This document shows positions 4,122-48,601 of a DNA stretch of 64,000 nt, one piece after another (the first letter of the stretch is position 1; every line of letters begins with the position of its first letter). The position numbers and the translations under genes are program-made. The notes under the pieces are model-generated. The model was not told where the DNA came from. It was given only the letters and a program-made list of their open reading frames with translations, and made no database searches. The DNA is taken from IMG/VR virus record IMGVR_UViG_3300023278_002893, positions 1 through 64,000 of that record; one strand, written 5' to 3'.

Positions 4122-4129
4122 CCAGGTGT

Positions 4130-4318: not shown

Positions 4319-4324
4319 GTGAAC

Positions 4325-4528: not shown

Positions 4529-4549
4529 ACCTAGCAGCTGTTCGGTGAG

Positions 4550-4864: not shown

Positions 4865-4877
4865 CAGGAGTATTGTC

Positions 4878-18403: not shown

Positions 18404-19264
18404 ATGAGTAACATAAGGATCCTAAAGCAGGTGAGGGATGGTGGTATCATCCTTCAAGAACAATTCAAAGGGATGTTCTTCTCCGGAGGAGAACCCCACG
18501 TGGTAATCGAAGCTCCCGACAAGTTGGCGGGGGCTTCTGTCATTTTGGATGCTCGGGTAGGTTCCCCGGCAGATATGATGATGCTTCTCGCGGTAACCAA
18601 TGCCGTGAAGGAGTGTGATGCTAAAGAGATTTCTCTTCTTCTGCCCTACTTCCCGGGAGCGCGGCAAGACAGATCCGAATCTGGATTTGCTGTCACCTCC
18701 AAAATGTTCGCAGCAATTATCAATCTCCAAGGATACAAGGTTGTGGGGGTAGTAGATCCCCATTCTGTTGCAGCGATCGAAGACCTGGAACGATGTGTTC
18801 CGTTGTCTCCGATCCCACTGATCAAACAGTTCCTCCCCGAGGGGCTGGTTGGTTTGATTTGCCCCGACGAGGGGGCCATTCCGAGGACTGAGGCGCTTGC
18901 CAAAGAACTCGGAGGTGTGCATGTGGTGTATGCCCATAAGAAACGAGATCCAAGGACGGGTAAGCTTACCGGTTTCACCTTGGATCCTCTCCCCGAAGAA
19001 GGTAACTGGCTTCTCGCAGATGATATCTGTGATGCAGGCGGAACCTTCATGGGAACGGCAGGTCAGTACCTGGAAGATCCCAAAGGTACCGGGCCTCTCC
19101 ATCTATGGACAACGCACGGCATCTATTCCAGAGGACTGGAAGAACTCGCCGGTTATTTCGCAACGATAGGGTGCTCTGATTCTTTCCCGAGCGCCGTCAA
19201 TCCCCACCCACAACTCCAGGTGGTTTCCATTCTGGACAACCTTGATCTCCTAGGAGGTATCTAA
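18404..19264 (+). CDS. prs: PRPP-synthetase-like protein (probable Adps of NARP1)
   Basis: FSGGEPHV, LPYFPGARQDR, VDPHS, ICPDEGA, KKRD, LADDICDAGGTF. Confidence 0.92.
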   Translation: MSNIRILKQVRDGGIILQEQFKGMFFSGGEPHVVIEAPDKLAGASVILDARVGSPADMMMLLAVTNAVKECDAKEISLLLPYFPGARQDRSESGFAVTSKMFAAIINLQGYKVVGVVDPHSVAAIEDLERCVPLSPIPLIKQFLPEGLVGLICPDEGAIPRTEALAKELGGVHVVYAHKKRDPRTGKLTGFTLDPLPEEGNWLLADDICDAGGTFMGTAGQYLEDPKGTGPLHLWTTHGIYSRGLEELAGYFATIGCSDSFPSAVNPHPQLQVVSILDNLDLLGGI

Positions 19265-19266
19265 TC

Positions 19267-20754
19267 ATGTTCCAATACGCACCCGAATCGGCGTTCGACG
19301 GATACAAAGGCGACCATCGTCGTCAATACCCCGACATGACACAATATGTCAATTCCAACTGGACTGCCCGCGGGTCCAGAGTCCAAGGGCAAAGGGAGGT
19401 TGTTTCGTTCTCCCTTCAAGCATTCCTTCAGGAACGTATGATGGACGACTTTCAACGGCTGTTCTTCGATGTACCGCTGGAAAAGGTACTGAAGAGGCAC
19501 GCTCGTCGGATGAACGGTTATCTCGGTCCCAACGACATGGGGGTTCAGCACATCGCCGACCTCCACGATCTGGGCTACGTACCTCTCCAGTTTTCTGGAT
19601 TGGAGGAGGGCACCCTGTGTCCGCTGCGCGTACCCCAATTCACTGTGCAGAACACACTTCCAGAGTTCTTCTGGATGACCAATGCATATGAAACCTTGAC
19701 CTCTACCTCGGTTTGGCAGCCCTCGACCTCGGCAACCACTGCCTATCGGTTTCGGAAGCTGCTGAATCAGTATGGGGCATTCACGGGGACAGCCCCCGAA
19801 GGTATTGGCTACCAAGGCCACGACTTCAGTTTCCGGGGACTACCCGGCCTGGAGGCGGCGGCCGCATCTGCTGCTGGTCACCTCCTGTCCTTCATCGGAA
19901 CGGATACTGTCCCGGCACTGGATTGGATCGAGCAGTACTACTGGGGCGACGAGCCGGACGATTATGTCATCGGCCAGTCAGTTTTCGCGACGGAGCACTC
20001 TGTCATGTGCGCCGGCGGAAAAGTTGGAGAACTTCAGACTTTCGAACGTCTGCTGGGTCTCTACCCCACCGGCATCTTCTCGGTAGTGTCCGACACCTGG
20101 AACCTGTGGCACGTCCTCACGGACATCCTTCCCAAACTCAAAGACCAGATCATGGAGCGCGAGGGCAAGATGGTCATTCGCCCCGACTCGGGTAACCCTG
20201 CAGACATTCTCTGCGGTGATCCCGAGGCAGTACGAGGAACTCCCGAGAGCAAGGGCGTTGTTCAACTGCTGTGGGAGGTCTTTGGCGGAACGAAGAACAA
20301 GTACGGTTACAAGGAGCTGGATTCCCACATCGGTTGCATCTACGGGGACGCCATCACCTTCGAGCGTGCTACAGAGATCATGCAGAGGCTGGCAGCATCG
20401 GGATTTGCTTCCGGCAACGTGGTCTTCGGGGTCGGTTCCTACAGCTATCAGCACGTCACCCGGGACACCTATGGACATGCCATGAAGGCTACTTGGGCGC
20501 AGGTTGATGGTGAAGGTCGAGACCTGTTCAAGAAACCGATCACCGATGGTGGTGAGAAGTTCTCCGCGACCGGACGGCTGGCAGTTCATGCCTACGACGA
20601 CGGTGAGCTGTATGTAATCGAGAAGGCCACTCCGGAGGAAGAAGCGGCATCGCTTCTGGTGCCTCGGTGGAAAGACGGTGAGTTCCTGAGCCGTACCTCC
20701 ATCTCTCAGGTACGAGCCAAGCTCTGGAGCGGTCAGCACGAGACCTCACTGTAG
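19267..20754 (+). CDS. nadV: nicotinamide phosphoribosyltransferase-like protein (probable Namat of NARP1)
   Basis: DGYKGDH..QYP, HDFSFRG, ATEHSVMC, SVVSDTWN, VIRPDSG, IYGDAIT, FGVGSYSYQ. Confidence 0.95.
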   Translation: MFQYAPESAFDGYKGDHRRQYPDMTQYVNSNWTARGSRVQGQREVVSFSLQAFLQERMMDDFQRLFFDVPLEKVLKRHARRMNGYLGPNDMGVQHIADLHDLGYVPLQFSGLEEGTLCPLRVPQFTVQNTLPEFFWMTNAYETLTSTSVWQPSTSATTAYRFRKLLNQYGAFTGTAPEGIGYQGHDFSFRGLPGLEAAAASAAGHLLSFIGTDTVPALDWIEQYYWGDEPDDYVIGQSVFATEHSVMCAGGKVGELQTFERLLGLYPTGIFSVVSDTWNLWHVLTDILPKLKDQIMEREGKMVIRPDSGNPADILCGDPEAVRGTPESKGVVQLLWEVFGGTKNKYGYKELDSHIGCIYGDAITFERATEIMQRLAASGFASGNVVFGVGSYSYQHVTRDTYGHAMKATWAQVDGEGRDLFKKPITDGGEKFSATGRLAVHAYDDGELYVIEKATPEEEAASLLVPRWKDGEFLSRTSISQVRAKLWSGQHETSL

Positions 20755-26733: not shown

Positions 26734-29700
26734 TTGAAGAATTTCGCTACGATCTTGAAGGCCATTACTCAAGATCAACTTCACCGGTTCAACAACCGCA
26801 TGCGCGCAAGTGGAAATACTCTTAATTTGAACGTAGAAATACGCGAAGAGAGTTTGAACATCTGTGTGGATTTCCGCACGCAAGACGAAGTAGGTACTCT
26901 GATCATTCCGCAACTTCGAAAGAACGAGTTTGGCAATTATGTCATAGGAGATCGAGTCGATCGAGCGATGTGCCCTTTCATGGTGGTCATGGACGGCAAC
27001 CCGCAACACATCAGCTACGAGAAGATGATTCTCGCAATGCTGAGCATGAACATGGAGGATCTCTTCCCCGAGCAGGGAAAGAGGAACCAAATTGGCAAGA
27101 TCCTTTGGGCGTTCTATCAAAAGAGAGGACGTCTCACGCTGGGTCAGTGCCAGAAGTTCCTCAACCAACGACTGTTCAATGCTCTGCCCCTGAGTGGAAC
27201 CTCCATGCAGGACTGGGCGATGAACCACCGCGTAATGATCTTCGATCCAATCTTCGACACTCTGAATCCCCCGGAGAAATTGGCATACCAGAGGCGCAAG
27301 AATGAATTGCTCCACCCCTGGTCCTCCATCGGAATATCCGAGGGTGCCGCCGCTACGCGGAACTACATACTCCAGAAGGATCTGAGAAACATCACTGCGT
27401 TTGGTAACAGGCACCATAACCCAATCCGAAATCTGTATTCTACCCTAGGAATGAAGGGCCCAGAAGCACCCTTGGTGATCTCCGAGGCTGCCGCGCGGTT
27501 GGAAGATCAAGGAATCGTGCGGGGTGGTTGGAACTGGATGACCGTGTTCCTGGATCTTCCCGAGACCTTCGAGGATCAAATCCTTGTTTCTGGTCGGCAT
27601 GCAGGTAAGACGGTGACCTACGAGAGAACCTTCACCGTGTTCGGTGAAGAGTCAGTAAATGTTGGAGATAACATCCTCAAGGGGAGAGTAATCGGAACCA
27701 ACGAGGACGAGAGCTCCATATATTTCGACATTGATTGCGAGCGTGCGGAAGTAATCGAGTGTAAGAACGGTAATGTGCCCTTCGACGGCCAGGATCAGCC
27801 AGTACGTATTGTTGTTCTCCGAGTCGTGTATACTTTCAAAGAGGGTTTCAAGATTACAAATCAGCACGGGAACAAGGGTATCGTAAAGGTCCTGCCTGAC
27901 CTCGGCACCGTTCAAGATCCAGTTCGTGGTGAAGTACCGATCGACGTGATCGTATCTGCCAAGTCCGTACAGAAGCGCAAGAACTTCGGTCAGATTCTCG
28001 AAGCGCTTGCCACTCGGGTCACCGGGCCGAAGAAGCGAATGGCTGTTCCCGACGATCTTCGTATCGAAGTAGCGCAGATCGAAAAGAAACTGGTCTCTGC
28101 TGGGTACCAAAAAGAAGGTACCTGCAAGGTCATCACGCCTTGGGGAGAATTCGATTCAATCTGTGGTTGGGTTCACTGGGGAGTCACCAAGACTCCTGAG
28201 GAACAACTCTGGCAGGGAAGGGATGTAAAGGCGACCAACCAACGGGGTCTTCGCATCCGAGGCAACAAGGTATCTCCCATCGAATTGAAAGCAATGACCA
28301 CCCTCTTCGGGCCCCGCTCGCAAGTGGTAAAGGAAGTGCTCTCACATCGACAAGGCCAGGACGAGGTCAGGGAGCTTCTGGACATCGTACGGGGAATGTC
28401 AGGTCTTTACCGAGACAACCTTCCCACGATCGATCCGGCCACTTTCGTATACAAACCGTCGGGTATGGGAACCTTCCATGACCAGGAAGCTCTCGTAGGA
28501 ACGGTGGCGGACGAAGAAATGTTCCCGGTCGGATGCTATATCCAACTCCCCTTCCGACTTCTGGTATCCATTCCGGATGACAGGAGTAAGGGGATACAAG
28601 AAGGTATCGCAGGTGAGAATGCCTACGAGCGATTGGGTACGGGGACTCGATACTTTGAGTTCGATCGCCTGATGGTTCCTTCTGCTGCTCTGCGACAACC
28701 GTGGAGGCACGCAACGGGAAAGCTCGGTCTGGCAGACATCGCCACACAGTTGAATCAGATACTGGAAGGTATTGATCGACTGGCACTTGGTGAGATTAAG
28801 GAGGCACAGCTCTCCACTCTAATCTTCCGCTACCTGCACCACATCGGACGTTCCCTCTCCACGAAGAACGGTAAGATCAGCACCTATGCAATGTCAACTC
28901 GCTACCCCTGGTCTTCTAAAGCCACTGCAATTCTCGGCTGCGGCCTGGAGACAAACTGGGTGGAGATCCACAAGGACATGGCACGAGACCTCAAGGTCGA
29001 GACCGGTGATTATGTCATGGTAGAACGTTTCCCGTGTTTGGGATTCATGTCAACGCGTATCCAGCGAGTGAAGGTGACCGACGATCCAGAGGCAAAGTAT
29101 GTCATCCGGGTCAGCGGCAATAGCCTGGGTTCAATGAACCTGGACTTCGATGGCGATGTTATTTATCTGATGAGCTTCCACACAGAGGGTGCCAAAGCGG
29201 AGTTGGAGCACAACTTCCACAACCCACACCCGAAGGTCAAGGAAGTCATCGACCGTCTGAACAACAAGAAGCAGCCAATGACCCGGACCATGACCCTCCA
29301 GGAAATGGAGATCATGTCCTTCGATCCAATGAGCCCAGAAGAGCACGCCGAGTTGAACGCCACATCCCTTGCTGTAAAACTCTGGACAGGGCCGACGATC
29401 GCACTTTGCTACAGCATGATGCGAATCGTGGAGGGAAATATCCCCTACGAAGACCGTGAAGCGCACATCAACATCGAGGTCTTCCTTGATAAGGTGGGTA
29501 ACTCTGTCTTCTCCCAGAAGCACGGAACGAAGAGCCTCAGAGAAGAGTGTGTGGAAGCGGTGTGTCTTGCCAAGCCGGAGGCACTGGTAGAATTGGGCTT
29601 CCCTGTAAGGGAGAGCGCCCAGCTCTGCAACATCATCCGTTCCTATGCCTCGAAGTTGGGTGTTCGAACCGACGAGGAACTTCTGGCACATTATAAACGC

Positions 29701-29898
29701 CACGTGGAAGAAGGAAAAGCAACCATCGTTAGTGCTATTGTGCGGCGCTTCCACAAGACCTACTTTGCAACCCGATCCAATCTCCACCCGCTTGATCTTT
29801 TGGAGCACCTGGAGCAAGAACCACGAGATCTCGTATCCTACCTGGTACAACAAACACTGGAGGGAGGAGATCGCGATAAGGAACTTAAGGTCGTATAG
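26734..29898 (+). CDS. single-chain beta-beta' fusion two-barrel DNA-directed RNA polymerase
   Basis: Beta-like motifs FGNYVIGDRVDRA, TFEDQILVS, KITNQHGNKG, IDVIV...RKNFGQILEA; beta'-like motifs PSAALRQP, ERFPCL, NLDFDGD; TTG start with AGGAG RBS. Confidence 0.9.
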   Translation: MKNFATILKAITQDQLHRFNNRMRASGNTLNLNVEIREESLNICVDFRTQDEVGTLIIPQLRKNEFGNYVIGDRVDRAMCPFMVVMDGNPQHISYEKMILAMLSMNMEDLFPEQGKRNQIGKILWAFYQKRGRLTLGQCQKFLNQRLFNALPLSGTSMQDWAMNHRVMIFDPIFDTLNPPEKLAYQRRKNELLHPWSSIGISEGAAATRNYILQKDLRNITAFGNRHHNPIRNLYSTLGMKGPEAPLVISEAAARLEDQGIVRGGWNWMTVFLDLPETFEDQILVSGRHAGKTVTYERTFTVFGEESVNVGDNILKGRVIGTNEDESSIYFDIDCERAEVIECKNGNVPFDGQDQPVRIVVLRVVYTFKEGFKITNQHGNKGIVKVLPDLGTVQDPVRGEVPIDVIVSAKSVQKRKNFGQILEALATRVTGPKKRMAVPDDLRIEVAQIEKKLVSAGYQKEGTCKVITPWGEFDSICGWVHWGVTKTPEEQLWQGRDVKATNQRGLRIRGNKVSPIELKAMTTLFGPRSQVVKEVLSHRQGQDEVRELLDIVRGMSGLYRDNLPTIDPATFVYKPSGMGTFHDQEALVGTVADEEMFPVGCYIQLPFRLLVSIPDDRSKGIQEGIAGENAYERLGTGTRYFEFDRLMVPSAALRQPWRHATGKLGLADIATQLNQILEGIDRLALGEIKEAQLSTLIFRYLHHIGRSLSTKNGKISTYAMSTRYPWSSKATAILGCGLETNWVEIHKDMARDLKVETGDYVMVERFPCLGFMSTRIQRVKVTDDPEAKYVIRVSGNSLGSMNLDFDGDVIYLMSFHTEGAKAELEHNFHNPHPKVKEVIDRLNNKKQPMTRTMTLQEMEIMSFDPMSPEEHAELNATSLAVKLWTGPTIALCYSMMRIVEGNIPYEDREAHINIEVFLDKVGNSVFSQKHGTKSLREECVEAVCLAKPEALVELGFPVRESAQLCNIIRSYASKLGVRTDEELLAHYKRHVEEGKATIVSAIVRRFHKTYFATRSNLHPLDLLEHLEQEPRDLVSYLVQQTLEGGDRDKELKVV

Positions 29899-30955: not shown

Positions 30956-31510
30956 ATGTCTAATAAGGAAACCTATATTATGCCATATACCAATCGTGAT
31001 TTTCCAGGTCGGAAATTCTCAAATACCAAAGAGCAAGAAGATGCGCAAGAAAAAAGAAACTCGATAGAACAAGAAATCTCCGAAAGACAAACCAGAGATA
31101 ACACGATCACTTGTGTCACAGCGACTATAATTCCTGCCCCACAAAGCGTATTAGAGCGTCGGTTATTAGAAGCAGAACGTCGAATCGATGAACTAAATCG
31201 TATAATTGAGAAGGGGCCCCCAAAAACATCCACCCTGAACAAGGATAATCTACCAATAGGAATGATTCTCCAAGGACAAAGTAAGGGTAAAGATTACACC
31301 CTAGAAATATTGGAAGAGGATTACCTATGCAGTACGGGTGATATCGTACCTTCGCTATCGGCCGCGGCTGGTCGCGTATCTGGAGTCAGAAGAAGCGGTT
31401 GGGAATTCTGGACAGATAGGAAAGGTACCCCTATAGGGACAATAACTGGAAGGTTCAATAAAGATGAGTGTTCAGACCCATTCGGAGCCATTGCAATGCC
31501 CGGAGTGTGA
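30956..31510 (+). CDS. coiled-coil protein with a C-terminal RAMA (DUF4357-like) domain
   Basis: SLSAAAGRVSGVRRSGWEFW. Confidence 0.65.
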   Translation: MSNKETYIMPYTNRDFPGRKFSNTKEQEDAQEKRNSIEQEISERQTRDNTITCVTATIIPAPQSVLERRLLEAERRIDELNRIIEKGPPKTSTLNKDNLPIGMILQGQSKGKDYTLEILEEDYLCSTGDIVPSLSAAAGRVSGVRRSGWEFWTDRKGTPIGTITGRFNKDECSDPFGAIAMPGV

Positions 31511-32168
31511 TTCCATCAATGCCTCCAAAGACGCTGCTGTAGGCGACGGACTTGTAGTGTGTTATGATTGCGGTGTCGTGTTTCCAGACGGTTCAGATAA
31601 AGTTTATCCGGAAATAACAGCATCCATTCTACGGTGCCCCCACTGCAAAGAAGTGGGTGTTATCAAAATATTCGAGGGTCGTGAAGAATGTCAGGAGTGT
31701 AGGTTAGATCCTAACGATCCGGACATACCTACCCACCATTTAGCGCATCTCTGGAAGTCCAGAACCAATGACACACCAGAGGATGATAAAACAATACGGG
31801 AGATAATGGAGATACCGAAGGAAGACGGCACTCCAAAACTACCCGCAGGCACATCGGTAGGTGAGTTTCTCCGAACAGAATGCGGGCCTCATTGCGCGCG
31901 CGGCATCAAATGTAACCAAACCACTGGAGATTTTACCCAGTGCTATAGAATGTACCGCGAAGCCAGGGGCACGGATATGTCAAAAAAGCGGAATAAAAAA
32001 GGAAAGCAGCGACGCTCTCCTGAAGAAAAAGCTGCTAAGCGAAACAAAAGAGCCAAATATATTAGATTACATTCCAGGGCGTGGCTCTTCTCACCCCCTA
32101 AGGGATGGTTTGTGAGTGAGAAAAACTATGAATCCGAAACTATTTATAAGGAACAGTCTGAGTCTTGA
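31464..32168 (+). CDS. multi-zinc-ribbon protein
   Basis: CPEC, CYDC, CPHC, CQEC and further Cys; basic C-terminus. Confidence 0.6.
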   Translation: MSVQTHSEPLQCPECDSINASKDAAVGDGLVVCYDCGVVFPDGSDKVYPEITASILRCPHCKEVGVIKIFEGREECQECRLDPNDPDIPTHHLAHLWKSRTNDTPEDDKTIREIMEIPKEDGTPKLPAGTSVGEFLRTECGPHCARGIKCNQTTGDFTQCYRMYREARGTDMSKKRNKKGKQRRSPEEKAAKRNKRAKYIRLHSRAWLFSPPKGWFVSEKNYESETIYKEQSES

Positions 32169-33576
32169 AGGAATCAATAGCGAAATAAAGGATCACCTCA
32201 AAGAATTGCTCACCATTCCAAATCCAGAATGGATAACCGCTAAGAATTTCGGGCGCTATACTGGAGATATTCCTAAGACCATAGAACAATTCTCGGAAGA
32301 ATTTGAAAGGCTAGTCGTCCCCAGAGGCATTCTAGAGTATGTCACTGAGAATCTGGGGCAGGAGTGGGACGTTGTAGATGAGCGAGTCGCTCCCGAATCC
32401 GAAAAAATTTGGCCGGAAGGTAAAGTAGTCCTCCGATACAACGACCAAGAACCTGCAGTGAGAGAGGTTCTCAATTCCGATAATGGTTTTCTGGTAGCTC
32501 CGGCGGGCTCTGGTAAAACTGTTATGGGGATAGAGATATGCCGACGATTGGGCTTGAAGGCACTCTTCCTCGTACATCGGAATGAGCTAAAAGACCAGGC
32601 AATAGAAACAGCAGAAGATCTGTTCGAGATTCCACGTAAGAAAATAGGTATACTTCACGGACCTAAGTGGAAGATGGGAGAACAGCTCACAGTCGGAATG
32701 ATCCCCACGCTTCGTAAGAGGAACTTAGAAGACATCAAGAACGAATTCGGCGTGGTGATGGTAGATGAGGCTCACCACACTCCAAGCTCTACCTTCCTAA
32801 ACGTGGTCAATAGGTTCAACGCCAAACATGTTTATGGCCTGACTGCCACTGCGTATAGAAGAGACGAACTTGATCCTGTGATGTTCAATGCTATTGGCCC
32901 CAAGCTATCAGAGATAGAGCATTTCGAACTGATCAAAGACGAACACCTGATTATCCCCACCATCCACAGAATCAATACCGGATGGAATCCACGTGATGCG
33001 GACGACTTAGACTACCACGGCTTCATGGACGCGATGGTGACGGACGAACACCGGAACCAACTGATAGTAGATAAGATCGTTCAGGAATGCCAAGACCCCA
33101 AGAACACAGCGGCAGTTCTGGTAAATAGAACTAAGCACTGTGAAAACTTGACCAAGATGTTGAAAGATCGGGGTATAAAGTGTGAGTTTATAGCATCCTC
33201 CGTGGATGTAGAACCAGATAGGGGGTCGGGGAAGAAGAAACAAAAGAAAAAGAAGAAGATGATCCCCAAGAAAATCAGGGAGGGGATCGTAAGTGACTTC
33301 AAGGAAGGCAAGATCCAAGTTCTTATTGCCACATACGACCTGTTAGCCGAAGGATTCAACTACCGACCCCTAAACTTGCTGTTCTTAGCCACTCCTATTC
33401 GTTGGAAAGGGCTGGTAGTCCAGTCAGTGGGACGTGTTCAAAGAACTTTCGAAGGCAAGACCGGATCTACTGTATTTGATTATGTCGATGGCGACATAGC
33501 TATGTTTTCTATTCAAGCGGACTCACGATTATCCGAAGTTTACAGAGTAATGGGGATGCCTGTAATAGATCATTAG
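32116..33576 (+). CDS. SF2 DExH helicase (XPB/UvsW-like)
   Basis: APAGSGKT, VDEAHH, GLTAT, QSVGRVQR. Confidence 0.93.
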   Translation: MRKTMNPKLFIRNSLSLEGINSEIKDHLKELLTIPNPEWITAKNFGRYTGDIPKTIEQFSEEFERLVVPRGILEYVTENLGQEWDVVDERVAPESEKIWPEGKVVLRYNDQEPAVREVLNSDNGFLVAPAGSGKTVMGIEICRRLGLKALFLVHRNELKDQAIETAEDLFEIPRKKIGILHGPKWKMGEQLTVGMIPTLRKRNLEDIKNEFGVVMVDEAHHTPSSTFLNVVNRFNAKHVYGLTATAYRRDELDPVMFNAIGPKLSEIEHFELIKDEHLIIPTIHRINTGWNPRDADDLDYHGFMDAMVTDEHRNQLIVDKIVQECQDPKNTAAVLVNRTKHCENLTKMLKDRGIKCEFIASSVDVEPDRGSGKKKQKKKKKMIPKKIREGIVSDFKEGKIQVLIATYDLLAEGFNYRPLNLLFLATPIRWKGLVVQSVGRVQRTFEGKTGSTVFDYVDGDIAMFSIQADSRLSEVYRVMGMPVIDH

Positions 33577-33584: not shown

Positions 33585-34697
33585 ATGAACTTTGATATCA
33601 ATCCCCACCCCAAGCTGATCAACGACCACCAGACGATCCGACTCCCTAGAAAGTTGAGAAAAGAAATAGGAGTGTTGGTGGGTCAGTTCATGCAGATCAG
33701 CGGTAAGGAAACCTTAGTCTTGGAAATCGGGAAGGACCTCGATGATTTCGAGACCAGTGCTTATGTCAGTGAGTCTAACTTTAGGAAGATTGAGGGACAA
33801 CAGTTAGAGTTCAAGATACTTGACGTAACATTAGGCTGTGATCCGGAGTTTTTCATTATGTGGGGGAAGCGTCTGATATCTGCGACTACTTATCTCCCAT
33901 TCAATGGTGCAATCGGTGCTGATGGTAATTTAGGAGAGCTTAGGCCTATGTATGCCCGTCACGAAAATGACGTGGTAGCTAACCTCCAAACGCTAATCAC
34001 CCAAGTACCAACTCGTATGAAAAGAGGCTACGGTGTGTCCGAAGGGTATCCCAAAGACGGTTCCCTCTTCGACCTTCAAGCCCACTCCTATTACTATGGA
34101 CTCGCAGCTGGGTTCCATGTGCATATGGGAATACCTCCCGAAATTCTAAACACCCGTAAATCTTTCAACCGGATAGCAATGAACCATCTGGTGAAATGCT
34201 TCGATTGGTTCGTATCTGTACCTTTAGTTCCTCTCGACGAAACTCCAGGCAGAAGACTGGGAGAGACTACCTACGGACAAGCGGGAGATTACCGCACAAC
34301 CAATTCGACCCTAGAATATAGAACTCCGGGAGGATTCTATCTCAGAACACCCACACTAGCTCGGGGTATGATGGGGTTATGTCTCATGGTAGCGGAGAAT
34401 GTAGTTAGTAGGATGAAGATCGCCAGTAGGAACTTCACAAGTCTGGACAAACTAACTCCTAATGACATGCAAGAGATCATGCCTGTTCCAAAAGTAAGTA
34501 AGGTTAAAGGAACCCTGGGAGCGCGAAGCCCGCTCGCAGCGGAGGGTTGCCTGGATGAAATACAGGAAAGCTTGAAGAAATTCCCCAACTACGATAAACA
34601 TCGGCGTTCAGTAGATGATTTTTTCAGCGTAGTGAGGTCAGGTCAAATACCAGTTTCCGACTTAATCCCTAATTGGAAGGTTAATGATGCCCAATAG
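33585..34697 (+). CDS. COOH-NH2 ligase type 2 (phiEco32-like) with an extra N-terminal domain
   Basis: LGCDPEF, GADG..ELRP, GFHVHMG, RR....YGQAGDYR, LEYRTPG. Confidence 0.85.
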   Translation: MNFDINPHPKLINDHQTIRLPRKLRKEIGVLVGQFMQISGKETLVLEIGKDLDDFETSAYVSESNFRKIEGQQLEFKILDVTLGCDPEFFIMWGKRLISATTYLPFNGAIGADGNLGELRPMYARHENDVVANLQTLITQVPTRMKRGYGVSEGYPKDGSLFDLQAHSYYYGLAAGFHVHMGIPPEILNTRKSFNRIAMNHLVKCFDWFVSVPLVPLDETPGRRLGETTYGQAGDYRTTNSTLEYRTPGGFYLRTPTLARGMMGLCLMVAENVVSRMKIASRNFTSLDKLTPNDMQEIMPVPKVSKVKGTLGARSPLAAEGCLDEIQESLKKFPNYDKHRRSVDDFFSVVRSGQIPVSDLIPNWKVNDAQ

Positions 34698-36384
34698 CAC
34701 CGGACAGCGCTCGATCAGCTTTCAACAGAGGTCGAATAGACCTCCGCTGACAAGCGAAGAGTGCAGCTATCTTCTCGAACTTCTGCCGAAGATTTTGAAA
34801 GTCGGGACAGAATTCGAAACTAATCTTCCAGAAGCAGGCGCCGCGCTCGAGGTGAAAAGTGGCATAAGGTGCGTACATTCAGTTTCGCCAAGAAACTGCG
34901 TGGAGGATTGTACCAACGTAGAAAGCTGTTTGGTGGAAAGGCACCCTACATTTTGTAAGACCCGCAGTTCGGGACAATTCCTAGGTGAAAAAACCACGTG
35001 TCCGGCAGGAAACGCCGATGACATCGACGCTTGTAGAGCATGCGACAAGTGGTTACTGGATTGTCGTAAACAGAAGTGTGCCTCTTACACCCCCTTCTGC
35101 TCAGTCTGCCCGAACTTTTCAGTAGCAGGAGCTTCCGTCGTCGACGCAGACATTCGACAAGATGCGGAAAGTATTCGTCAAGAAGTAAAGAAATTACTCA
35201 GGCCGACCGAACACGTAGGAATCGTTGGTAAGTCTGGAGCACTGAGTGTGATCAAGGACGGTTCCCTACTCGGTGGCGGGATCGAAGTACCCACCGTAGG
35301 TAGAAGGGTACATTGGCAGAGCTTTTACAAGATGTGTGAGGGAATTCTTGAACCCATCATAAAACGTGGTGGATTTGTCGATGAAAGAACAGGTCAGCAT
35401 TTCCATGTACTGTCCGGTTACTTCGATAAAGGCACAACCCACGCGATCAATGATTTGGAAGTGCCCCTACCAGAGATCGTTTTGGCCAACCTTCACCAGC
35501 TACATCGAAGATACGAAGCCGCGATGTTCTGGATGATGAGTTGTGGAAATAGGATGGAACACCTCACAAGGTGGTCAAGGTTCCGGCAATCCATATACCA
35601 ATACAGCGCACTGCGCAGTCGAATGAGTACCGTGCAACAGGAATTGGCAGAAAAGATAGTATGTATGGGCGGTACCAACCAAAATGGTAAGTACGCTTCT
35701 GTTGCATATCACTTCTGCCGATTTGACGTCGCGGGGGACGTTAGTACTCTGCACTTCGAGAATCGTATTGCGGATGGATGTCTTTCCCCAGCGGTAATCA
35801 CTGCGTGGGCAATGATGTGCTATGCTCTTGTCCTCAAGGCGGTTCGACTTTCCCAATACGGAATCATGGAAGTTGGAGATAGTGAATACAACGCGGCAGC
35901 GAAAGAAGCCTCCTCCCACCTAATCGATGGAGAAAGACGAAGTTGGGACGGCAGCCGACACGCCGATACTTCAGGCATTGGACCATCGATTCCCTTCCTC
36001 CAAAGATCTTCAAGAGAGCTAATCCAACTTCTCAAACCGGAGATACACAACTTAGGGCCGGCGTTCCATATCCTAATGGAGCTGGCAGAGAAGCCCTGCT
36101 CGATCCGTCTTGCCAACGGAGACTCTTGGGACGAGATTGAATCCGAACTTTACGGACCTTATAAGCATGAAGAATCTCCATTTACCGGAAACAACGTGGA
36201 TGAGGTGCGGGAACTCATCGACCTGGCAACGATCATAGAGTGTGAGGATGTTAACGCGTGGATAGGAGAGGTCGCTGGCCATCTAGGTCAAGAGACCGAA
36301 GTCACCGAAGAAACGGTACAAAGTCTACTCGCTTCTGGGCGATATAGATGGAGCCCGGCGATCGGCTCGCTCATTACTGTTTAG
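34684..36384 (+). CDS. amidoligase (glutamate-cysteine-ligase/GS-fold, Amidoligase_2-like) with a Cys-rich insert
   Basis: VGTEFE, IKDGSL..GGIEVPT, TGQHFHV, TLHFENR. Confidence 0.75.
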   Translation: MMPNSTGQRSISFQQRSNRPPLTSEECSYLLELLPKILKVGTEFETNLPEAGAALEVKSGIRCVHSVSPRNCVEDCTNVESCLVERHPTFCKTRSSGQFLGEKTTCPAGNADDIDACRACDKWLLDCRKQKCASYTPFCSVCPNFSVAGASVVDADIRQDAESIRQEVKKLLRPTEHVGIVGKSGALSVIKDGSLLGGGIEVPTVGRRVHWQSFYKMCEGILEPIIKRGGFVDERTGQHFHVLSGYFDKGTTHAINDLEVPLPEIVLANLHQLHRRYEAAMFWMMSCGNRMEHLTRWSRFRQSIYQYSALRSRMSTVQQELAEKIVCMGGTNQNGKYASVAYHFCRFDVAGDVSTLHFENRIADGCLSPAVITAWAMMCYALVLKAVRLSQYGIMEVGDSEYNAAAKEASSHLIDGERRSWDGSRHADTSGIGPSIPFLQRSSRELIQLLKPEIHNLGPAFHILMELAEKPCSIRLANGDSWDEIESELYGPYKHEESPFTGNNVDEVRELIDLATIIECEDVNAWIGEVAGHLGQETEVTEETVQSLLASGRYRWSPAIGSLITV

Positions 36385-36404
36385 ATAGGAGGTCGTAGGT
36401 TAGA

Positions 36405-37229
36405 ATGTGTGGAATTGCAACAATCTCTATTGGGCGAGGCAGGCGCGGGAGAATTCCCTATAATAAGCTCCAAGGCCTTACCCAAAAGATCCTGGTTGAA
36501 CTGTCCGATCGAGGACAAGATGCATCAGGAATAGCGGTAGTCGGTGACGACCACTGCTTCGTATTCAAGAAACCGCTGAGGCCGGATAGATTGGTGGTTA
36601 GACCAAGATTTAGGGAAATCCTGGAAAAAATCGGGCCGGAAACAAATTTCATTATGTTGCACTCACGGGCAGCATCGGTAGGAGGTAACGAAGACAACTT
36701 CAACAATCACCCCATCGTAGCAGACCCGGTCATTGGTATCCACAACGGTACTCTCTACAACACTGAGAAACTACGCAAAAAGTTCAGTGATAGATTTTCG
36801 ACGGCGGGGAATGTAGATTCCGAGATCCTCTTCCGGATGTTCAACATGTATCTAGAAGAAGGACTAACTCCCAAACAAGCCCTGTGCAAGGTCACCGAAC
36901 AACTGTCGGGTGCTTTTACTGGGGCAGCGTTGGATCTTCGACACACCCATCGAATGTTGATGTTCAAGTTCCAACGTGATTTGGCGGTATTGCAGCTTAG
37001 TCACTACGACATACTCGTCGCGGTATCAAAACCGTATCACTACGATCGGGCGAGGGATACGATGGGACTGTCCGTGAAGGACAAGCTTTCGTATCCTAAG
37101 GAAGCAACTGCATTTTCGATTGATCTAAATGACGGGCCGGTCACAGAGCAATCAGACACTTTCCCCATTCCAGTAAAGAAAGAAGAATACTGGAAAGATG
37201 AATATAAACAGTGGGCATACTTCGGATAA
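36405..37229 (+). CDS. class II glutamine amidotransferase
   Basis: N-terminal MCG, RGQDASG, HSRAA..G....NNHP, GIHNG, NVDSE. Confidence 0.92.
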   Translation: MCGIATISIGRGRRGRIPYNKLQGLTQKILVELSDRGQDASGIAVVGDDHCFVFKKPLRPDRLVVRPRFREILEKIGPETNFIMLHSRAASVGGNEDNFNNHPIVADPVIGIHNGTLYNTEKLRKKFSDRFSTAGNVDSEILFRMFNMYLEEGLTPKQALCKVTEQLSGAFTGAALDLRHTHRMLMFKFQRDLAVLQLSHYDILVAVSKPYHYDRARDTMGLSVKDKLSYPKEATAFSIDLNDGPVTEQSDTFPIPVKKEEYWKDEYKQWAYFG

Positions 37230-37248
37230 GACAGGAGAGAAGTAAAAA

Positions 37249-38919: not shown

Positions 38920-38937
38920 GGTCGAGGAAACCAAGCA

Positions 38938-43044: not shown

Positions 43045-44076
43045 ATGATTACGCTCGACACTTTTATCGGGAACACCGAACTAATTCAGCTCCTGAAAAT
43101 AGAAGTAATGGCAGCAAGAATGCGCAACAAAGAAATGCCCCACGTTTTACTAAAAGGCCCGGCTGGGTGCGGAAAGACTACCCTCGGAGAGGTACTCGCA
43201 CGCGAATTTGGAGGGGAGCTGACAACGCTCACCCCCAATACCGCAAAGAACGCGGACGACTTAAGAAAGTTCTTCCTGGAGATGCCGGATCAGGGGTACG
43301 ATGAGGAAGGCAAAATAGTTGGTAAAATAGATCCTCAAATCGTATTCATCGACGAGGTTCACCAACTGTCTCTGCTAGCCCAGGAGCTGTTGGGAATCGC
43401 AATGCATGACTGGAGACTTCCTGTCAGGGTAGGGGGCAAGGATGAGTTCGAATGGGTACCTAGATTTACATTAGTGGGTGCAACTACCGTACCTGGAAAA
43501 CTATCTAAACCCTTCCGAGACAGATTCAAGGTACAAGCCCTGTTCGAAACCTATTCCCACAGAGAATCTCTAGAGATAGTAGATGTTCACGCCAGGAATG
43601 AAGGTCTCCAGCTGGGTGAGGGTGTCTCAGATTCGATAGCAAAGAGATCCAGAGGAGTGGGACGTCTCTTGGTAAGGTATTTAGACAGACTTGCATCAGC
43701 GGCAGTGGTGGCATCTCAGGTCAGACCGGAGGGAAGTAATGTTATTACTTTACCTCTTGCAAATAAAATGTTTGCAGATTTCCTAAAAGTGGACGATCGG
43801 GGGCTGACGAAAACGGACATAAAGATCTTAAAGCAGCTCCACCTTCTGGAAGATCCAGTAGGATTAGATACCCTAGCTGCGATAACCAACGAAGAAAAAT
43901 CTACCATAGAACAAGAAATTGAACCATATTTAGTGCAGGAGGGGCTACTAGCCCGAACTAAACGTGGTCGAGTTATAACAGACGAAGGCAGACGATATTT
44001 ACACACCGCCGGCTACATCAAACTGGCGCCTACCTCGGCGAGAGGGGGCCGCATTATGGGAGCATCGGAGAAATGA
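43045..44076 (+). CDS. ruvB: Holliday junction branch-migration AAA+ ATPase RuvB
   Basis: HVLLKGPAGCGKTTL, FIDEVH, FTLVGATT, PFRDRF, EPYLVQEG...RTKRGR. Confidence 0.92.
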   Translation: MITLDTFIGNTELIQLLKIEVMAARMRNKEMPHVLLKGPAGCGKTTLGEVLAREFGGELTTLTPNTAKNADDLRKFFLEMPDQGYDEEGKIVGKIDPQIVFIDEVHQLSLLAQELLGIAMHDWRLPVRVGGKDEFEWVPRFTLVGATTVPGKLSKPFRDRFKVQALFETYSHRESLEIVDVHARNEGLQLGEGVSDSIAKRSRGVGRLLVRYLDRLASAAVVASQVRPEGSNVITLPLANKMFADFLKVDDRGLTKTDIKILKQLHLLEDPVGLDTLAAITNEEKSTIEQEIEPYLVQEGLLARTKRGRVITDEGRRYLHTAGYIKLAPTSARGGRIMGASEK

Positions 44077-44909
44077 GTCGAGGAAGCGTAGAGTATCTGA
44101 AGAAAAAACTTAAGGGTCCCATCCTAGAAGAAATCATCGACCCCGCGGACTACTCGCGCGACGACATCATGAAGTCATACTTCCGAGAAATCTTATTCCT
44201 AGCGTCTCGTTTTACTCGCCCCTACGTAGATTACGAAGACCTGGTAGATGAGGGAATCATAGGATTGCTTGACGCGATCAAAAGATTCGACATCAAAAAG
44301 GCCAATAACAATCCCAAGGCATTCCACAACCTCGCTATCGTCCGTATAAAGAGCCATATGTTCGAATTCTTCCTAGCGAACAATACTCAATATACGATTC
44401 CGAACTACATGGCACGGGCAATGGAATTGCTCGGACAAATTCGAGCCACTATCAGCAACTCCAACTACCGAGGGAACAAACAGGAAGCTCTTCGACACCT
44501 CGTATGTGAAGACTTCGAGAACACCGCGGCTCCCGAGGCTGTCAAGAAACTAGGGGTAGTGAAAGGCAAGATGCAACGACTTGCTATCAGCTCCGCTAAG
44601 AGCTATGAAGATATGGTACTTACAGTATTGAAGGTCGAAAGGGACATCGAAAGCTACGAAACGCCCGGCAGTGAGGTAGAACCCACACCAGAAGAAATCA
44701 CTGCGGACAGGGAATATATAGAGAAATTCCTGGACAACCTAAATCCCGACGCAAAGGCTGTCATCACCATGGTCTTAGAGGGCAAGTCCCTGAAGGAAGC
44801 TGGTAGAGAGCGTGGATTCTCTCGTGAACGGGCGCGGCAAATCAAAGAGGCTACGATGAAATACTTCAGGGCCACGCCTATGTACAAAGAATCCGTAGAA
44901 AAAGAATAA
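44073..44909 (+). CDS. sigma-70 family RNA polymerase sigma factor
   Basis: Region 2: EDLVDEGIIGLLDAIKRFD; region 4: SLKEAGRERGFSRERARQI. Confidence 0.88.
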   Translation: MSRGSVEYLKKKLKGPILEEIIDPADYSRDDIMKSYFREILFLASRFTRPYVDYEDLVDEGIIGLLDAIKRFDIKKANNNPKAFHNLAIVRIKSHMFEFFLANNTQYTIPNYMARAMELLGQIRATISNSNYRGNKQEALRHLVCEDFENTAAPEAVKKLGVVKGKMQRLAISSAKSYEDMVLTVLKVERDIESYETPGSEVEPTPEEITADREYIEKFLDNLNPDAKAVITMVLEGKSLKEAGRERGFSRERARQIKEATMKYFRATPMYKESVEKE

Positions 44910-48600: not shown

Positions 48601-48601
48601 A

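What the first reader, a model, noticed from the sequence alone, without database searches (positions are those of the whole stretch)
26734..29898. Miniature single-chain beta-beta' RNA polymerase: a near-complete bacterial-type catalytic core in 1054 aa
Seen: one uninterrupted ORF carries, in order, matches to beta motifs and then beta' motifs. Beta-like: FGNYVIGDRVDRA (cf. GTFIINGTERV); TFED at 27565-27576 (cf. NFED, E813/D814 in E. coli); KITNQHGNKG from 27850 (the two conserved lysines of GRHGNKG); RKNFGQILEA (cf. RMNIGQILE). Beta'-like: PSAALRQP...DIATQLNQIL (clamp helices); TKNGKISTYAMSTRYPWS (cf. [18 protein letters not shown]); ERFPCL (cf. NRAPTL); NLDFDGD at 29137-29157 (cf. NADFDGD). 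Known: bacterial beta plus beta' is about 2700 aa and needs alpha2; phiKZ/AR9 enzymes are split into several subunits; YonO and crAss-type enzymes are single-chain but highly diverged. Inference: this is a fused, stripped-down core less than half the normal size that keeps both double-psi barrels. LAVKLWTGPTIALCYSMMR and FLDKVGNSVFSQKHG may be bridge-helix and trigger-loop equivalents. No alpha homolog is visible in the window.
Basis: partly seen in the sequence, partly recalled or inferred. Interest (0 to 1): 0.88.

Follow-up and report, generated by a model that had tools for sequence, protein, structure and literature searches.

The report
Single-chain mini RNA polymerase, jumbo phage
An uncultured giant phage encodes one 1054-residue protein that joins cut-down versions of the two catalytic subunits of cellular RNA polymerase; it founds a conserved, undescribed family of compact transcription enzymes.

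Summary
Window 26734-29898 (+) is one uninterrupted 1054-aa ORF with a TTG start behind an AGGAG ribosome-binding site, and every quoted motif sits at the stated coordinates. Pfam places RNA_pol_Rpb2_6 (beta) at aa 357-467 and RNA_pol_Rpb1_2 (beta') at aa 752-826, both above gathering score. The eight residues universal to two-barrel RNA polymerases, plus the extra glutamate typical of DNA-dependent enzymes, are kept in 145-151 of 152 full-length relatives. An AlphaFold model (pLDDT 87.7, pTM 0.83) matches beta/Rpb2 chains with its N-terminal half and beta'/Rpb1 chains with its C-terminal half.

The gene lies on a 297,725-bp IMG/VR contig. Relatives occur only on uncultured contigs of up to 315 kb. 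None was found in 50,697 deposited phage genomes. It shows no profile similarity to YonO and is not split like the phiKZ/AR9 enzymes. The nearest described architecture is the yeast killer-plasmid ORF6 fusion.

The nearest relative by sequence is an undescribed bacterial family of about 1040 aa whose gene directly follows an ECF sigma gene. The phage also carries a co-conserved sigma-70-family gene, 14 kb away.

The bridge-helix and trigger-loop assignments rest on the model alone. I rate it a new variant of a known kind, interest 0.68.

The parts
26734..29898 (+). Gene for the single-chain beta-beta' RNA polymerase (1054 aa; TTG start, AGGAG ribosome-binding site upstream)
26734..27453 (+). 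Reduced beta N-terminal module (aa 1-240). It includes GNYVIGDRVDRA (aa 67-78), which profile-aligns with the G-F-I-x-G-x-x-RVVVP motif of the sister family.
   Evidence: hhalign A1 vs A3 starts at aa ~31; secondary structure
27400..27459 (+). FGNRHHNPIRNLYSTLGMKG (aa 223-242), a degenerate counterpart of the canonical beta IPFLEHDDxNR-LMG-NM motif in the fork/hybrid-binding region
   Evidence: aligned to that motif of the sister family; H228, P230, R232, N233, L234 invariant
27526..27588 (+). First half of the beta double-psi barrel, carrying the invariant E280-D281 (TFED, nt 27565-27576)
   Evidence: aligned to FEDA of the sister family
27589..27813 (+). All-beta insert (aa 286-360) inside the beta barrel, at the position of the canonical flap (sandwich-barrel hybrid motif) domain. 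It is absent from the sister family.
   Evidence: DSSP strands 293-367; gap in the A3 alignment; aligns with the longer insert of Arash gp206
27814..28134 (+). Second half of the beta barrel with K373 and K381 (KITNQHGNKG) and RKNFGQILEA; this is the Pfam Rpb2_6 match, aa 357-467
28135..28671 (+). Beta C-terminal region plus connector to the beta' part (aa 468-646), including the beta-sheet at aa 601-648
   Evidence: model secondary structure; collinear alignment with the sister family
28672..28857 (+). Beta' lid-like segment and helical hairpin (aa 647-708; helices 668-684 and 690-708), the candidate clamp helices
   Evidence: DSSP; weak hhalign to E. coli beta' 243-361 (E 0.062); aligned to the equivalent region of the sister family
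28858..28929 (+). Switch-2-like segment STKNGKISTYAMSTRYPWSSKATA (aa 709-732)
   Evidence: K711, G713, R723, Y724, P725, A732 invariant; aligned with E. coli [21 protein letters not shown] (weak)
28930..29172 (+). Beta' double-psi barrel with ERFPCLGF (R765, P767) and the metal-binding NLDFDGD (D804, D806, D808; nt 29137-29157). The Pfam Rpb1_2 match (aa 752-826, nt 28987-29211) extends slightly beyond this span.
29335..29439 (+). Candidate bridge helix (aa 868-902, a 35-residue helix; K882, T885, G886, Y893, R897, E900 invariant in the 33-sequence alignment)
   Evidence: DSSP; conservation; no profile support
29455..29565 (+). Candidate trigger-loop hairpin (aa 908-944) with conserved N923, F926, K929, H930
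   Evidence: DSSP; conservation; assignment inferred only
29566..29895 (+). C-terminal helical domain (aa 945-1054), family-specific
   Evidence: no match to beta' or to the sister family
44073..44909 (+). Sigma-70-family factor (278 aa; regions 2 and 4). It co-occurs with the polymerase on at least 13 contigs. It is a candidate specificity factor for the host or for the phage polymerase.
   Evidence: contig-length match
32116..33576 (+). SF2 (DEAD/ResIII) helicase, found 0.7-6 kb downstream of the polymerase gene in 13 of 13 related loci; any functional link is unproven

Best explanation
The ORF encodes a catalytically competent, single-polypeptide DNA-dependent RNA polymerase of the two-double-psi-beta-barrel class, on the branch of the cellular multisubunit enzymes. 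It belongs to an uncultured jumbo phage whose contig is about 298 kb.

Shown: the N-terminal half is a cut-down beta. It keeps a degenerate fork/hybrid-binding motif. Its barrel supplies E280/D281 and K373/K381 and carries a short all-beta insert at the flap position. The C-terminal half is a cut-down beta'. It has a lid-like segment, a helical hairpin at the clamp-helix position, a switch-2-like segment, and a barrel with R765/P767 and D804/D806/D808.

Inferred: the three aspartates bind the catalytic Mg2+. The long helix at aa 868-902 acts as the bridge helix, and the hairpin with K929/H930 acts as the trigger loop. The covalent beta-to-beta' link replaces assembly on an alpha dimer. The enzyme transcribes part of the phage genome, which frees those genes from the host polymerase.

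The means of promoter recognition is unknown. The co-conserved phage sigma factor is one candidate partner. It may instead redirect the host enzyme.
For: - Pfam Rpb2_6 and Rpb1_2 are both above gathering score and in beta-then-beta' order.
- The best PDB sequence and profile hits are bacterial beta chains.
- The eight universal two-barrel residues plus the fifth carboxylate (listed in PMC2919709) are invariant in 33 sequences and kept in 145-151 of 152.
- The full-length model has pLDDT 87.7 and pTM 0.83.
- Foldseek matches the full model to beta/Rpb2 chains (E 1e-12 to 3e-10). It matches the C-terminal half to beta'/Rpb1 chains, including AR9 nvRNAP (E 5e-9).
- There are 254 relatives, full length on contigs up to 315 kb, and 53 representative clusters below 1e-30.
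- Synteny is conserved in 13 of 13 IMG/VR loci.
- Phage-like context: 14 tRNAs, SSB, helicase, clamp loader, NadV and a CCA-adding enzyme.
- The window contains no alpha homologue and no second RNAP gene.
Against: - No biochemistry exists and the phage is uncultured.
- Only 64 kb of the 298-kb contig was visible, so further subunits or a second polymerase elsewhere cannot be excluded.
- The last 246 residues have no detectable profile similarity to beta' or to the sister family, so bridge helix and trigger loop are model-based guesses.
- No conserved promoter motif was found.
- No capsid or terminase gene was seen among the window ORFs I scanned. The phage label therefore rests on IMG/VR membership and on gene content.
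Confidence: 0.78

Rival explanations
1. The polypeptide is only the catalytic core of a larger enzyme. It needs the phage sigma-70-family protein (44073-44909) to start at promoters, so it would be a sigma-dependent single-chain polymerase. This refines the best explanation and does not replace it.
For: In the closest related family, an ECF sigma gene overlaps the start of the polymerase gene in 4 of 5 contexts, and one protein has sigma region 2 fused to its N-terminus. That family aligns collinearly with this one over 618 columns (E 5e-25). The helical hairpin at the clamp-helix position, which is the main sigma-binding site in bacteria (established knowledge), is retained. The phage sigma co-occurs with the polymerase on at least 13 contigs.
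Against: The phage sigma gene lies 14 kb from the polymerase gene. No sigma gene occurs within the flanks held (up to 10 kb) of 19 related loci. The phage sigma is group 1-3-like and not ECF-like, with no similarity to the sister-family sigmas. The insert at the flap position has no predicted helix that could serve as a flap-tip helix. Many jumbo phages without any polymerase of their own encode sigma factors for the host enzyme (PMC7824862).
Confidence: 0.3
2. It is an RNA-dependent RNA polymerase, or an RNA-processing polymerase, of the QDE-1/YonO-like branch and not a transcriptase.
For: Other single-chain two-barrel phage enzymes belong to that branch (PMC10770324, PMC2919709). The best full-length viral structural matches are uncharacterised or tail-annotated phage proteins.
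Against: It has the fifth carboxylate (E280) that PMC2919709 reports missing in YonO-like and RNA-dependent enzymes. It also has an insert at the flap position, where PMC7824862 reports no insert domain in those enzymes. hhalign to YonO gives E 0.74. The Foldseek top 50 are all canonical beta/Rpb2 chains. YonO itself is DNA-dependent (PMC5467207).
Confidence: 0.05
3. It works in replication: as a primer-making polymerase, or as a PolD-like two-barrel DNA polymerase.
For: The gene sits among SSB, SF2 helicase and clamp-loader genes. Linkage to the helicase is conserved in 13 of 13 loci. PolD shows that a two-barrel core can polymerise DNA (PMC7708050).
Against: All sequence and fold matches listed are to RNA polymerases. 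No PolD chain appears in the top 50 of either fold search. Replication-type neighbourhoods are common for early and middle phage genes.
Confidence: 0.05
4. It is a decayed or non-catalytic relic of a captured rpoB-rpoC pair.
For: Pfam scores are low (27-28 bits) and most peripheral domains are lost.
Against: Catalytic residues are kept in 145-151 of 152 relatives that diverge down to about 35% identity. Length and synteny are conserved across at least 13 long contigs. The fold is predicted with confidence.
Confidence: 0.02

Closest known systems
Yeast cytoplasmic linear-plasmid (pGKL2 virus-like element) RNA polymerase, ORF6 (about 975-982 aa) plus ORF7 (132 aa)
   Same: Both are a beta-then-beta' fusion of about 1000 aa on the multisubunit-polymerase branch. 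Spacing between conserved beta regions is shortened, most of the beta' clamp and the rim helices are lost, and there is no alpha subunit (PMC2919709, PMC6211774). Both are linked to an SF2 helicase gene.
   Different: The yeast enzyme is eukaryote/NCLDV-like and has its beta' C-terminal regions on a separate small subunit. Here 246 residues follow DFDGD in the same chain, and no ORF7-like partner was seen. The hosts differ (fungal cytoplasm versus bacteriophage).
Undescribed bacterial ECF-sigma-linked compact beta-beta' fusion (P0201, P0202, P0206, P0208, P0244; 988-1071 aa)
   Same: This is the closest relative by sequence: hhalign probability 99.6%, E 5e-25, collinear over 618 columns from the beta N-terminus through DFDGD. 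The fusion order and the size are the same.
   Different: The sister family scores far higher against Pfam (Rpb2_6 72-137 bits, plus Rpb2_3). It lacks the aa 286-360 insert. Its region after DFDGD is unrelated. It sits in bacterial chromosomal or MAG contexts directly behind an ECF sigma gene. I found no publication on it.
YonO (SPbeta) and related RdRP-like single-chain enzymes
   Same: Single-chain two-barrel phage RNA polymerase of 800-1000 aa that needs no alpha subunit (PMC5467207).
   Different: There is no profile similarity (E 0.74). PMC2919709 reports that YonO-type enzymes lack the fifth carboxylate, and PMC7824862 reports that they lack the barrel insert; this protein has E280 and an insert at that position. 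YonO relatives in the phage collection are nearly all from phages of Firmicutes.
phiKZ/AR9 jumbo-phage multisubunit polymerases
   Same: Jumbo-phage-encoded homologues of beta and beta' without alpha or omega. The AR9 beta'-N chain is among the fold matches, and a phiKZ beta-like chain is a weak profile hit (E 0.008).
   Different: Those enzymes are split into 4-5 polypeptides and come as virion and non-virion sets (PMC7598289). This one is a single chain, and its sequence is nearer to bacterial beta than to the phiKZ subunit (6e-8 versus 8e-3).
Fused beta-beta'N proteins of cultured phages (Vibrio phage D181, 1006 aa; Salmonella phage Arash gp206, 1525 aa)
   Same: Beta and the beta' N-terminal part lie in one ORF of a large phage. 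hhalign to this family gives E 6e-11 and 2e-8 over the beta barrel.
   Different: They are far more canonical (Rpb2_6 about 190-200 bits). They stop about 70 aa after the DFDGD region, so their beta' C-terminal part must be separate. tblastn with this protein gives only marginal hits to them, at E 2e-3 or worse.
crAss-like gp66 and P23-45 gp64/gp96 single-chain two-barrel polymerases
   Same: Single polypeptides with both barrels and proven activity (PMC10770324). A tail-annotated Siphoviridae protein is the best global structural match among viral models (TM 0.51).
   Different: None of them appears among the listed PDB sequence, profile or fold hits. The authors place them in the other major clade of two-barrel enzymes (PMC10770324).

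Membership tests
Two-barrel RNA polymerases, multisubunit-type branch | The eight universally invariant residues: three Asp of DxDGD, the Asp of the beta 'ED', two beta Lys spaced by 8, and the Arg and Pro of the beta' R-x-P motif (PMC2919709) | tested here: met
   D804/D806/D808, D281, K373/K381, R765/P767 are invariant in 33 sequences and kept in 145-151 of 152.
Two-barrel RNA polymerases, multisubunit-type branch | Fifth carboxylate next to the beta Asp (Rpb2 E836), present in DNA-dependent enzymes and absent in RdRP/YonO types (PMC2919709) | tested here: met
   E280 is invariant in 33 sequences and kept in 149 of 152.
Two-barrel RNA polymerases, multisubunit-type branch | Matches to curated beta and beta' barrel models above threshold | tested here: met
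   PF00562 scores 28.4 bits against 23.4; PF00623 scores 27.4 against 25.3.
Two-barrel RNA polymerases, multisubunit-type branch | Fold similarity of the two halves to beta/Rpb2 and beta'/Rpb1 | tested here: met
   Foldseek gives E 1e-12 to beta chains and E 5e-9 to beta'/Rpb1 chains. Models have pLDDT 87.7 and 78.5.
Two-barrel RNA polymerases, multisubunit-type branch | Sandwich-barrel (flap) domain inserted in the beta barrel (PMC7824862) | tested here: inconclusive
   A 75-aa all-beta insert occupies the right position. Its fold was not compared on its own, and it has no predicted helix.
Two-barrel RNA polymerases, multisubunit-type branch | Bridge helix and trigger loop after the beta' barrel | tested here: inconclusive
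   The model has a 35-residue helix at aa 868-902 and a hairpin at aa 908-944 with conserved residues. There is no profile match (E 0.6-0.8).
Two-barrel RNA polymerases, multisubunit-type branch | The two barrels face each other to form one active site | not testable with these tools
   Model coordinates are not exposed to scripts. Only pTM 0.83 for the whole chain speaks for a defined arrangement.
Two-barrel RNA polymerases, multisubunit-type branch | Templated, Mg2+-dependent RNA synthesis | not testable with these tools
   This needs purified protein.
YonO / RdRP-like single-chain polymerases | Detectable sequence-profile similarity to YonO | tested here: not met
   hhalign of the family profile against SPbeta YonO gives probability 0.06%, E 0.74.
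YonO / RdRP-like single-chain polymerases | Lacks the fifth carboxylate and the barrel insert (PMC2919709, PMC7824862) | tested here: not met
   The protein has E280 and the aa 286-360 insert.
phiKZ/AR9-type jumbo-phage polymerases | Beta and beta' each split into two or more polypeptides; paired virion and non-virion sets (PMC7598289) | tested here: not met
   It is a single ORF. No other RNAP-like ORF lies in the 64-kb window. The remaining 234 kb of the contig was not visible.
crAss gp66 / P23-45 gp64-gp96 clade | Sequence or fold closer to these solved structures than to cellular subunits | tested here: not met
   None is listed among the PDB sequence or profile hits shown or in the Foldseek top 50, which are all beta/Rpb2 chains.
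Yeast linear-plasmid ORF6/ORF7 polymerase | Beta-then-beta' fusion of about 1000 aa | tested here: met
   Domain order and size match. This is a resemblance of architecture only.
Yeast linear-plasmid ORF6/ORF7 polymerase | Direct sequence relationship to ORF6, and a separate ORF7-like small subunit carrying beta' C-terminal regions | not tested
   The yeast sequences are not in the collections these tools can fetch. No small ORF is conserved next to the gene across the 13 loci.
ECF-sigma-linked compact beta-beta' fusions of bacteria (undescribed) | Collinear homology across the fusion junction | tested here: met
   hhalign E 5e-25 over 618 columns, query 39-831 against template 47-755.
ECF-sigma-linked compact beta-beta' fusions of bacteria (undescribed) | ECF sigma gene immediately upstream, overlapping the polymerase gene | tested here: not met
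   There is no sigma gene within the flanks held (up to 10 kb) of 19 related phage loci. The window's sigma gene is 14 kb away and is not ECF-like.

The most novel reading that the evidence does not exclude
This phage enzyme and its bacterial sister family may together form an unrecognised lineage of compact single-chain polymerases, about 1000 aa long and of the cellular type, that still use sigma factors. If so, holoenzyme-style promoter recognition can work on a core less than 40% of normal size, without alpha or omega. Some bacteria would then carry a private second transcription system (an ECF sigma plus a mini core), and a clade of jumbo phages would carry its viral counterpart.
Probability: 0.3. 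Interest if true: 0.88.

Novelty: new variant of a known kind. Interest (0 to 1): 0.68.

Why it matters
**A smaller cellular-type polymerase.** If active, this would be among the smallest enzymes that keep the sequence signature of the cellular multisubunit RNA polymerase, and not that of the YonO/QDE-1 branch. It packs both barrels and a candidate bridge helix and trigger loop into 1054 residues.

**What it makes testable.** It offers a simple system for asking which parts of beta and beta' are needed for templated RNA synthesis. It also bears on whether covalent fusion can replace assembly on the alpha dimer, and on whether a sigma factor can work with such a core.

**Evolution.** The finding adds a prokaryotic-virus counterpart to the yeast killer-plasmid fusion, which its authors called unique in 2018 (PMC6211774). 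It is relevant to the debate on whether viral two-barrel enzymes are reduced captures or ancient relics (PMC10770324, PMC7824862).

**Phage biology.** It marks out a widespread uncultured jumbo-phage clade with its own transcription enzyme, with no relative found in 50,697 deposited phage genomes.

**Practical use.** A compact single-chain polymerase, possibly sigma-programmable, could become a tool for in vitro or orthogonal transcription.

Tried and rejected
**Relatives among deposited phages.**
- tblastn of the protein and megablast of 20 kb of flanking DNA against 50,697 phage records found nothing at 1e-5.
- At E<=10 the only hits were marginal ones to beta segments of other phage or host-derived genes.
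- The co-conserved 566-aa neighbour also has no phage match.

**Promoters.**
- K-mer enrichment in intergenic DNA gave only CAGAGTAG, which looks like stop-plus-RBS or tRNA-flank sequence.
- Sigma-70-like promoters and intrinsic terminators are not enriched (14 found against 18.9 expected; 24 against 19.7).
- The regions upstream of the gene in the three closest contigs share no motif.

**Bridge helix and trigger loop.** hhalign of the last 246 residues against E. coli beta' 465-1407 and against the sister-family C-terminus was not significant.

**Sigma linkage.**
- The window sigma has no similarity to the sister-family ECF sigmas.
- No sigma gene lies near the polymerase gene in 19 related loci.
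- A single-sequence scan of IMG/VR for the sigma recovered only the window's own contig.

**Host.** The genome-collection scan found the gene only on 16-43-kb contigs of MAGs from six unrelated phyla. This is the pattern expected of mis-binned phage contigs, so no host can be named.

**Literature.** Eight searches and several papers turned up no description of this family or its sister family. Two Iyer/Aravind papers (2003 and 2012) are not held and could not be checked.

**Rejected readings.**
- YonO membership.
- A split phiKZ-type enzyme.
- A decayed relic.

**Other.** An Rfam scan of the window found only tRNAs.

Full report
**1. The observation**

Window 26734-29898 (+) is an uninterrupted ORF of 1054 codons. 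Its TTG start lies 6-7 nt after AGGAG. Relatives start at the equivalent alignment position.

Pfam finds RNA_pol_Rpb2_6 at aa 357-467 (E 1.2e-6, 28.4 bits, cut-off 23.4). It finds RNA_pol_Rpb1_2 at aa 752-826 (E 4.7e-6, 27.4 bits, cut-off 25.3). PHROGs gives two 'RNA polymerase beta subunit' families for the same two stretches. The best sequence matches in the PDB are bacterial beta chains, at 1e-5 for the single sequence and 6e-8 for a 33-sequence profile. The phiKZ beta-like chain scores only 8e-3.

**2. Catalytic residues**

PMC2919709 lists eight residues shared by all two-barrel polymerases. It also lists a fifth carboxylate found in DNA-dependent enzymes and missing in the YonO/RdRP group.

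Here these are D804/D806/D808, D281, K373/K381 (spaced by 8, as in Rpb2 K979/K987), R765/P767, and E280. All are invariant in an alignment of 33 relatives with 37-80% identity to the query. They are kept in 145-151 of 152 full-length relatives. A relic would not keep this pattern.

**3. Structure**

AlphaFold2 on the 33-sequence alignment gives mean pLDDT 87.7 and pTM 0.83. Foldseek against the PDB returns beta/Rpb2 chains for all top 50 hits, with E from 1e-12 to 3e-10.

Chain-wise search hides the second half, so I modelled aa 560-1054 separately from a 13-sequence alignment (pLDDT 78.5). That model hits beta'/Rpb1 chains of bacteria, archaea and eukaryotes, and the AR9 non-virion enzyme (E 5e-9 and up). 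About 250-275 columns superpose at 5-6 A. Longer alignments of 520-610 columns have rmsd of 21-25 A.

The beta' barrel and its N-terminal neighbourhood are therefore well supported. The part after the barrel is not. It contains a 35-residue helix (aa 868-902) with invariant K882, T885, G886, Y893, R897 and E900. A helical hairpin follows (aa 908-944) with conserved N923, F926, K929 and H930. These fit a bridge helix and a trigger loop. However, hhalign of the last 246 residues against E. coli beta' and against the sister family is not significant (E 0.6-0.8).

**4. What is kept and what is lost**

Kept, according to the profile alignment with the sister family and weak alignments to E. coli:
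- an N-terminal G-x-x-V-I-G-x-x-V-x-R motif;
- a degenerate fork/hybrid-binding motif (aa 223-242);
- both halves of the beta barrel, with an all-beta 75-aa insert at the flap position;
- RKNFGQILEA;
- a beta' lid-like segment and a two-helix hairpin at the clamp-helix position (aa 668-708);
- a switch-2-like segment;
- the beta' barrel.

Lost or unrecognisable:
- most of the beta lobes;
- any predicted helix in the insert at the flap position;
- the beta' zinc-binding N-terminus;
- the rim helices; only about 60 residues separate DFDGD from the long helix, whereas in E. coli (numbering from established knowledge) the gap is about 300.

The protein is 38% of the length of E. coli beta plus beta' (1342 + 1407 aa, from the gene coordinates). 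The window holds no alpha homologue and no second RNAP-like ORF.

**5. The genome**

The window is the first 64 kb of a 297,725-bp contig, JGI 3300023278 = IMGVR_UViG_3300023278_002893. It carries:
- 14 tRNAs;
- NadV and a PRPP-synthetase-like gene, SSB and an SF2 helicase;
- a clamp loader, a CCA-adding enzyme and a sigma-70-family gene;
- a block of amidoligase and glutamine-amidotransferase genes.

No structural gene turned up among the ORFs I scanned. 'Phage' therefore rests on IMG/VR membership and on gene content.

**6. Relatives**

The word-indexed search found 254 relatives. They are mostly 1030-1180 aa long, lie on contigs up to 315 kb, and are all unnamed or 'hypothetical'. The exhaustive search of 1.84 billion representative proteins found 53 clusters below 1e-30. 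Scores then fall off gradually through shorter sequences. Other polymerases, matched only over a barrel segment, start at about 1e-9.

IMG/VR holds 13 loci. In all 13 the polymerase gene is followed, within 0.7-6 kb, by the SF2 helicase, a COOH-NH2 ligase, a 566-aa protein and amidotransferases.

None of 50,697 deposited phage genomes has a relative at 1e-5. In the species-genome collection the gene appears only on short contigs of MAGs from six unrelated phyla. This looks like mis-binning and gives no host.

**7. Comparison with known single-chain or phage polymerases**

- **YonO.** hhalign probability is 0.06% and E is 0.74. PMC2919709 reports that YonO-type enzymes lack the fifth carboxylate, and PMC7824862 reports that they lack the barrel insert. 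This protein is not a member.
- **phiKZ/AR9.** Those enzymes are split into 4-5 polypeptides (PMC7598289). This one is a single chain and is nearer to bacterial beta by profile score.
- **crAss gp66 and P23-45 gp64/gp96.** They are absent from the listed sequence and fold hits. Their authors place them in the other major clade of two-barrel enzymes. [quoted passage not shown] This protein belongs with those derivatives.
- **pGKL2 ORF6.** This is the closest described architecture, a beta::beta' fusion of about 980 aa with a separate 132-aa ORF7. Its authors said in 2018 that the fusion was not known in any other polymerase (PMC6211774). I could not compare the sequences directly.
- **Cultured phages.** Vibrio phage D181 (1006 aa, 'hypothetical') and Salmonella phage Arash gp206 (1525 aa) also fuse beta to the beta' N-terminal part. 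They are much more canonical and end about 70 aa after the DFDGD region.

**8. The sister family and the sigma question**

Among the weak hits are proteins of 988-1071 aa with strong Rpb2_3, Rpb2_6 and Rpb1_2 matches in the same order. Their profile aligns collinearly with this family over 618 columns, across the fusion junction (probability 99.6%, E 5e-25). They lack the aa 286-360 insert.

In 4 of 5 contexts their gene starts inside the stop of an ECF-type sigma gene. One of these contexts is an 8.08-Mb circular bacterial contig, and another is an Armatimonadota MAG. One further protein has sigma region 2 fused in front. I found no paper on this.

The window has its own sigma-70-family gene at 44073-44909, with regions 2 and 4 above Pfam thresholds. 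Its orthologues sit on at least 13 contigs whose lengths are identical to those carrying the polymerase orthologues.

Against a direct partnership:
- the gene is 14 kb away;
- no sigma gene lies within the flanks held (up to 10 kb) of 19 related loci;
- the sigma resembles group 1-3 factors and not the ECF sigmas;
- jumbo phages without their own polymerase also encode sigma factors for the host enzyme (PMC7824862).

I put the sigma-dependent reading at about 0.3.

**9. Mechanism**

Shown: the fused architecture, the conserved catalytic residues, a confident fold with beta-like and beta'-like halves, and family-wide conservation and synteny.

Inferred:
- two-metal catalysis by D804/D806/D808 together with E280/D281;
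- NTP and RNA 3'-end contacts by K373/K381 and R765;
- a bridge helix and a trigger loop in the C-terminal helices;
- the covalent link replacing alpha-dimer assembly (established knowledge: beta and beta' are naturally fused in some bacteria, as also noted in the supplement of PMC10770324);
- a role in transcribing part of the phage genome.

Unknown: promoter recognition, which gene class it transcribes, and whether it is packaged in the virion.

**10. Verdict**

The family is not one of the characterised single-chain families. Single-chain two-barrel polymerases, including beta::beta' fusions of the cellular type, are however an established kind. I rate it a new variant of a known kind, with interest 0.68. 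The rating would rise if the link to sigma factors proves functional.

Noticed in passing
L019:9444-13216, L020:9399-13129, L021:9399-13114, L030:4423-7967; protein P0239: An apparently undescribed two-gene cassette in bacterial chromosomes and MAGs. An ECF-type sigma gene overlaps the start of a 988-1071-aa fused beta-beta' polymerase gene in 4 of 5 contexts. One protein has sigma region 2 fused in front. Transposase and toxin-antitoxin genes are frequent neighbours.
   Followed up: partly
window 44073-44909: The phage sigma-70-family gene (regions 2 and 4) lies next to a clamp-loader gene and a CCA-adding enzyme gene. It is found on the same contigs as the polymerase in at least 13 cases but never beside it.
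   Followed up: partly
window 33585-41327 and 48602-49453: A block of two COOH-NH2 ligases, three glutamine amidotransferases, a 566-aa protein with no family match and RimK-like ATP-grasp enzymes. The ligase, 566-aa and amidotransferase core lies downstream of the polymerase in 13 of 13 related loci. It suggests a peptide-like or amidated small-molecule or protein-modification pathway.
   Followed up: partly
window 1116-1192: ARAGORN calls a tRNA with a four-base anticodon (ttca) and no assigned amino acid. Rfam confirms it as a tRNA (53.7 bits). It could be a frameshift-suppressor-like or otherwise unusual tRNA.
   Followed up: no
window 54710-63542 (- strand): A minus-strand block of a B12-binding radical SAM enzyme, a family-2 glycosyltransferase, four class I methyltransferases (CmcI-like) and a ConA-like lectin-domain protein. 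It looks like a glycan-modification module. GC skew changes sign at about 51 kb, where the coding strand switches.
   Followed up: no
L003:5236-8256 (Vibrio phage D181) and L004:3679-8256 (Salmonella phage Arash gp206): Cultured large phages carry one ORF that fuses a canonical-looking beta to the beta' N-terminal part, ending about 70 aa after the DFDGD region. The records annotate these ORFs only as 'hypothetical protein' or 'subunit beta'. Arash gp206 lies next to the portal gene.
   Followed up: partly
BFVD hits A0A172Q0S6 and A0A8S5SD80_1: The best viral structural matches to the full model are an uncharacterised 798-aa protein of Acinetobacter jumbo phage vB_AbaM_ME3 and a 'minor tail protein' of an uncultured siphovirus (TM 0.51 over 1241 columns). 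The second may be a tape-measure-fused polymerase of the P23-45 gp96 type. No Acinetobacter phage, and hence not ME3, appears among the phages found by tblastn with YonO.
   Followed up: partly
window 31464-32168 and 30956-31510: Two small proteins lie between the polymerase and helicase genes. One is a Zn-ribbon protein with sub-threshold TFIIB Zn-ribbon hits, conserved in the two closest contigs. The other is a DUF2924-like 184-aa protein, conserved in 8 of 13 loci. Either could be a transcription factor.
   Followed up: no
window 47012-48601 and 4122-5291: Stretches of 1.6 kb and 1.2 kb have no convincing same-strand ORF. Rfam finds no known RNA family there.
   Followed up: no
window 18404-20754: A NAD-salvage pair, a PRPP-synthetase-like gene and a nicotinamide phosphoribosyltransferase (NadV), lies upstream of the polymerase region.
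   Followed up: no
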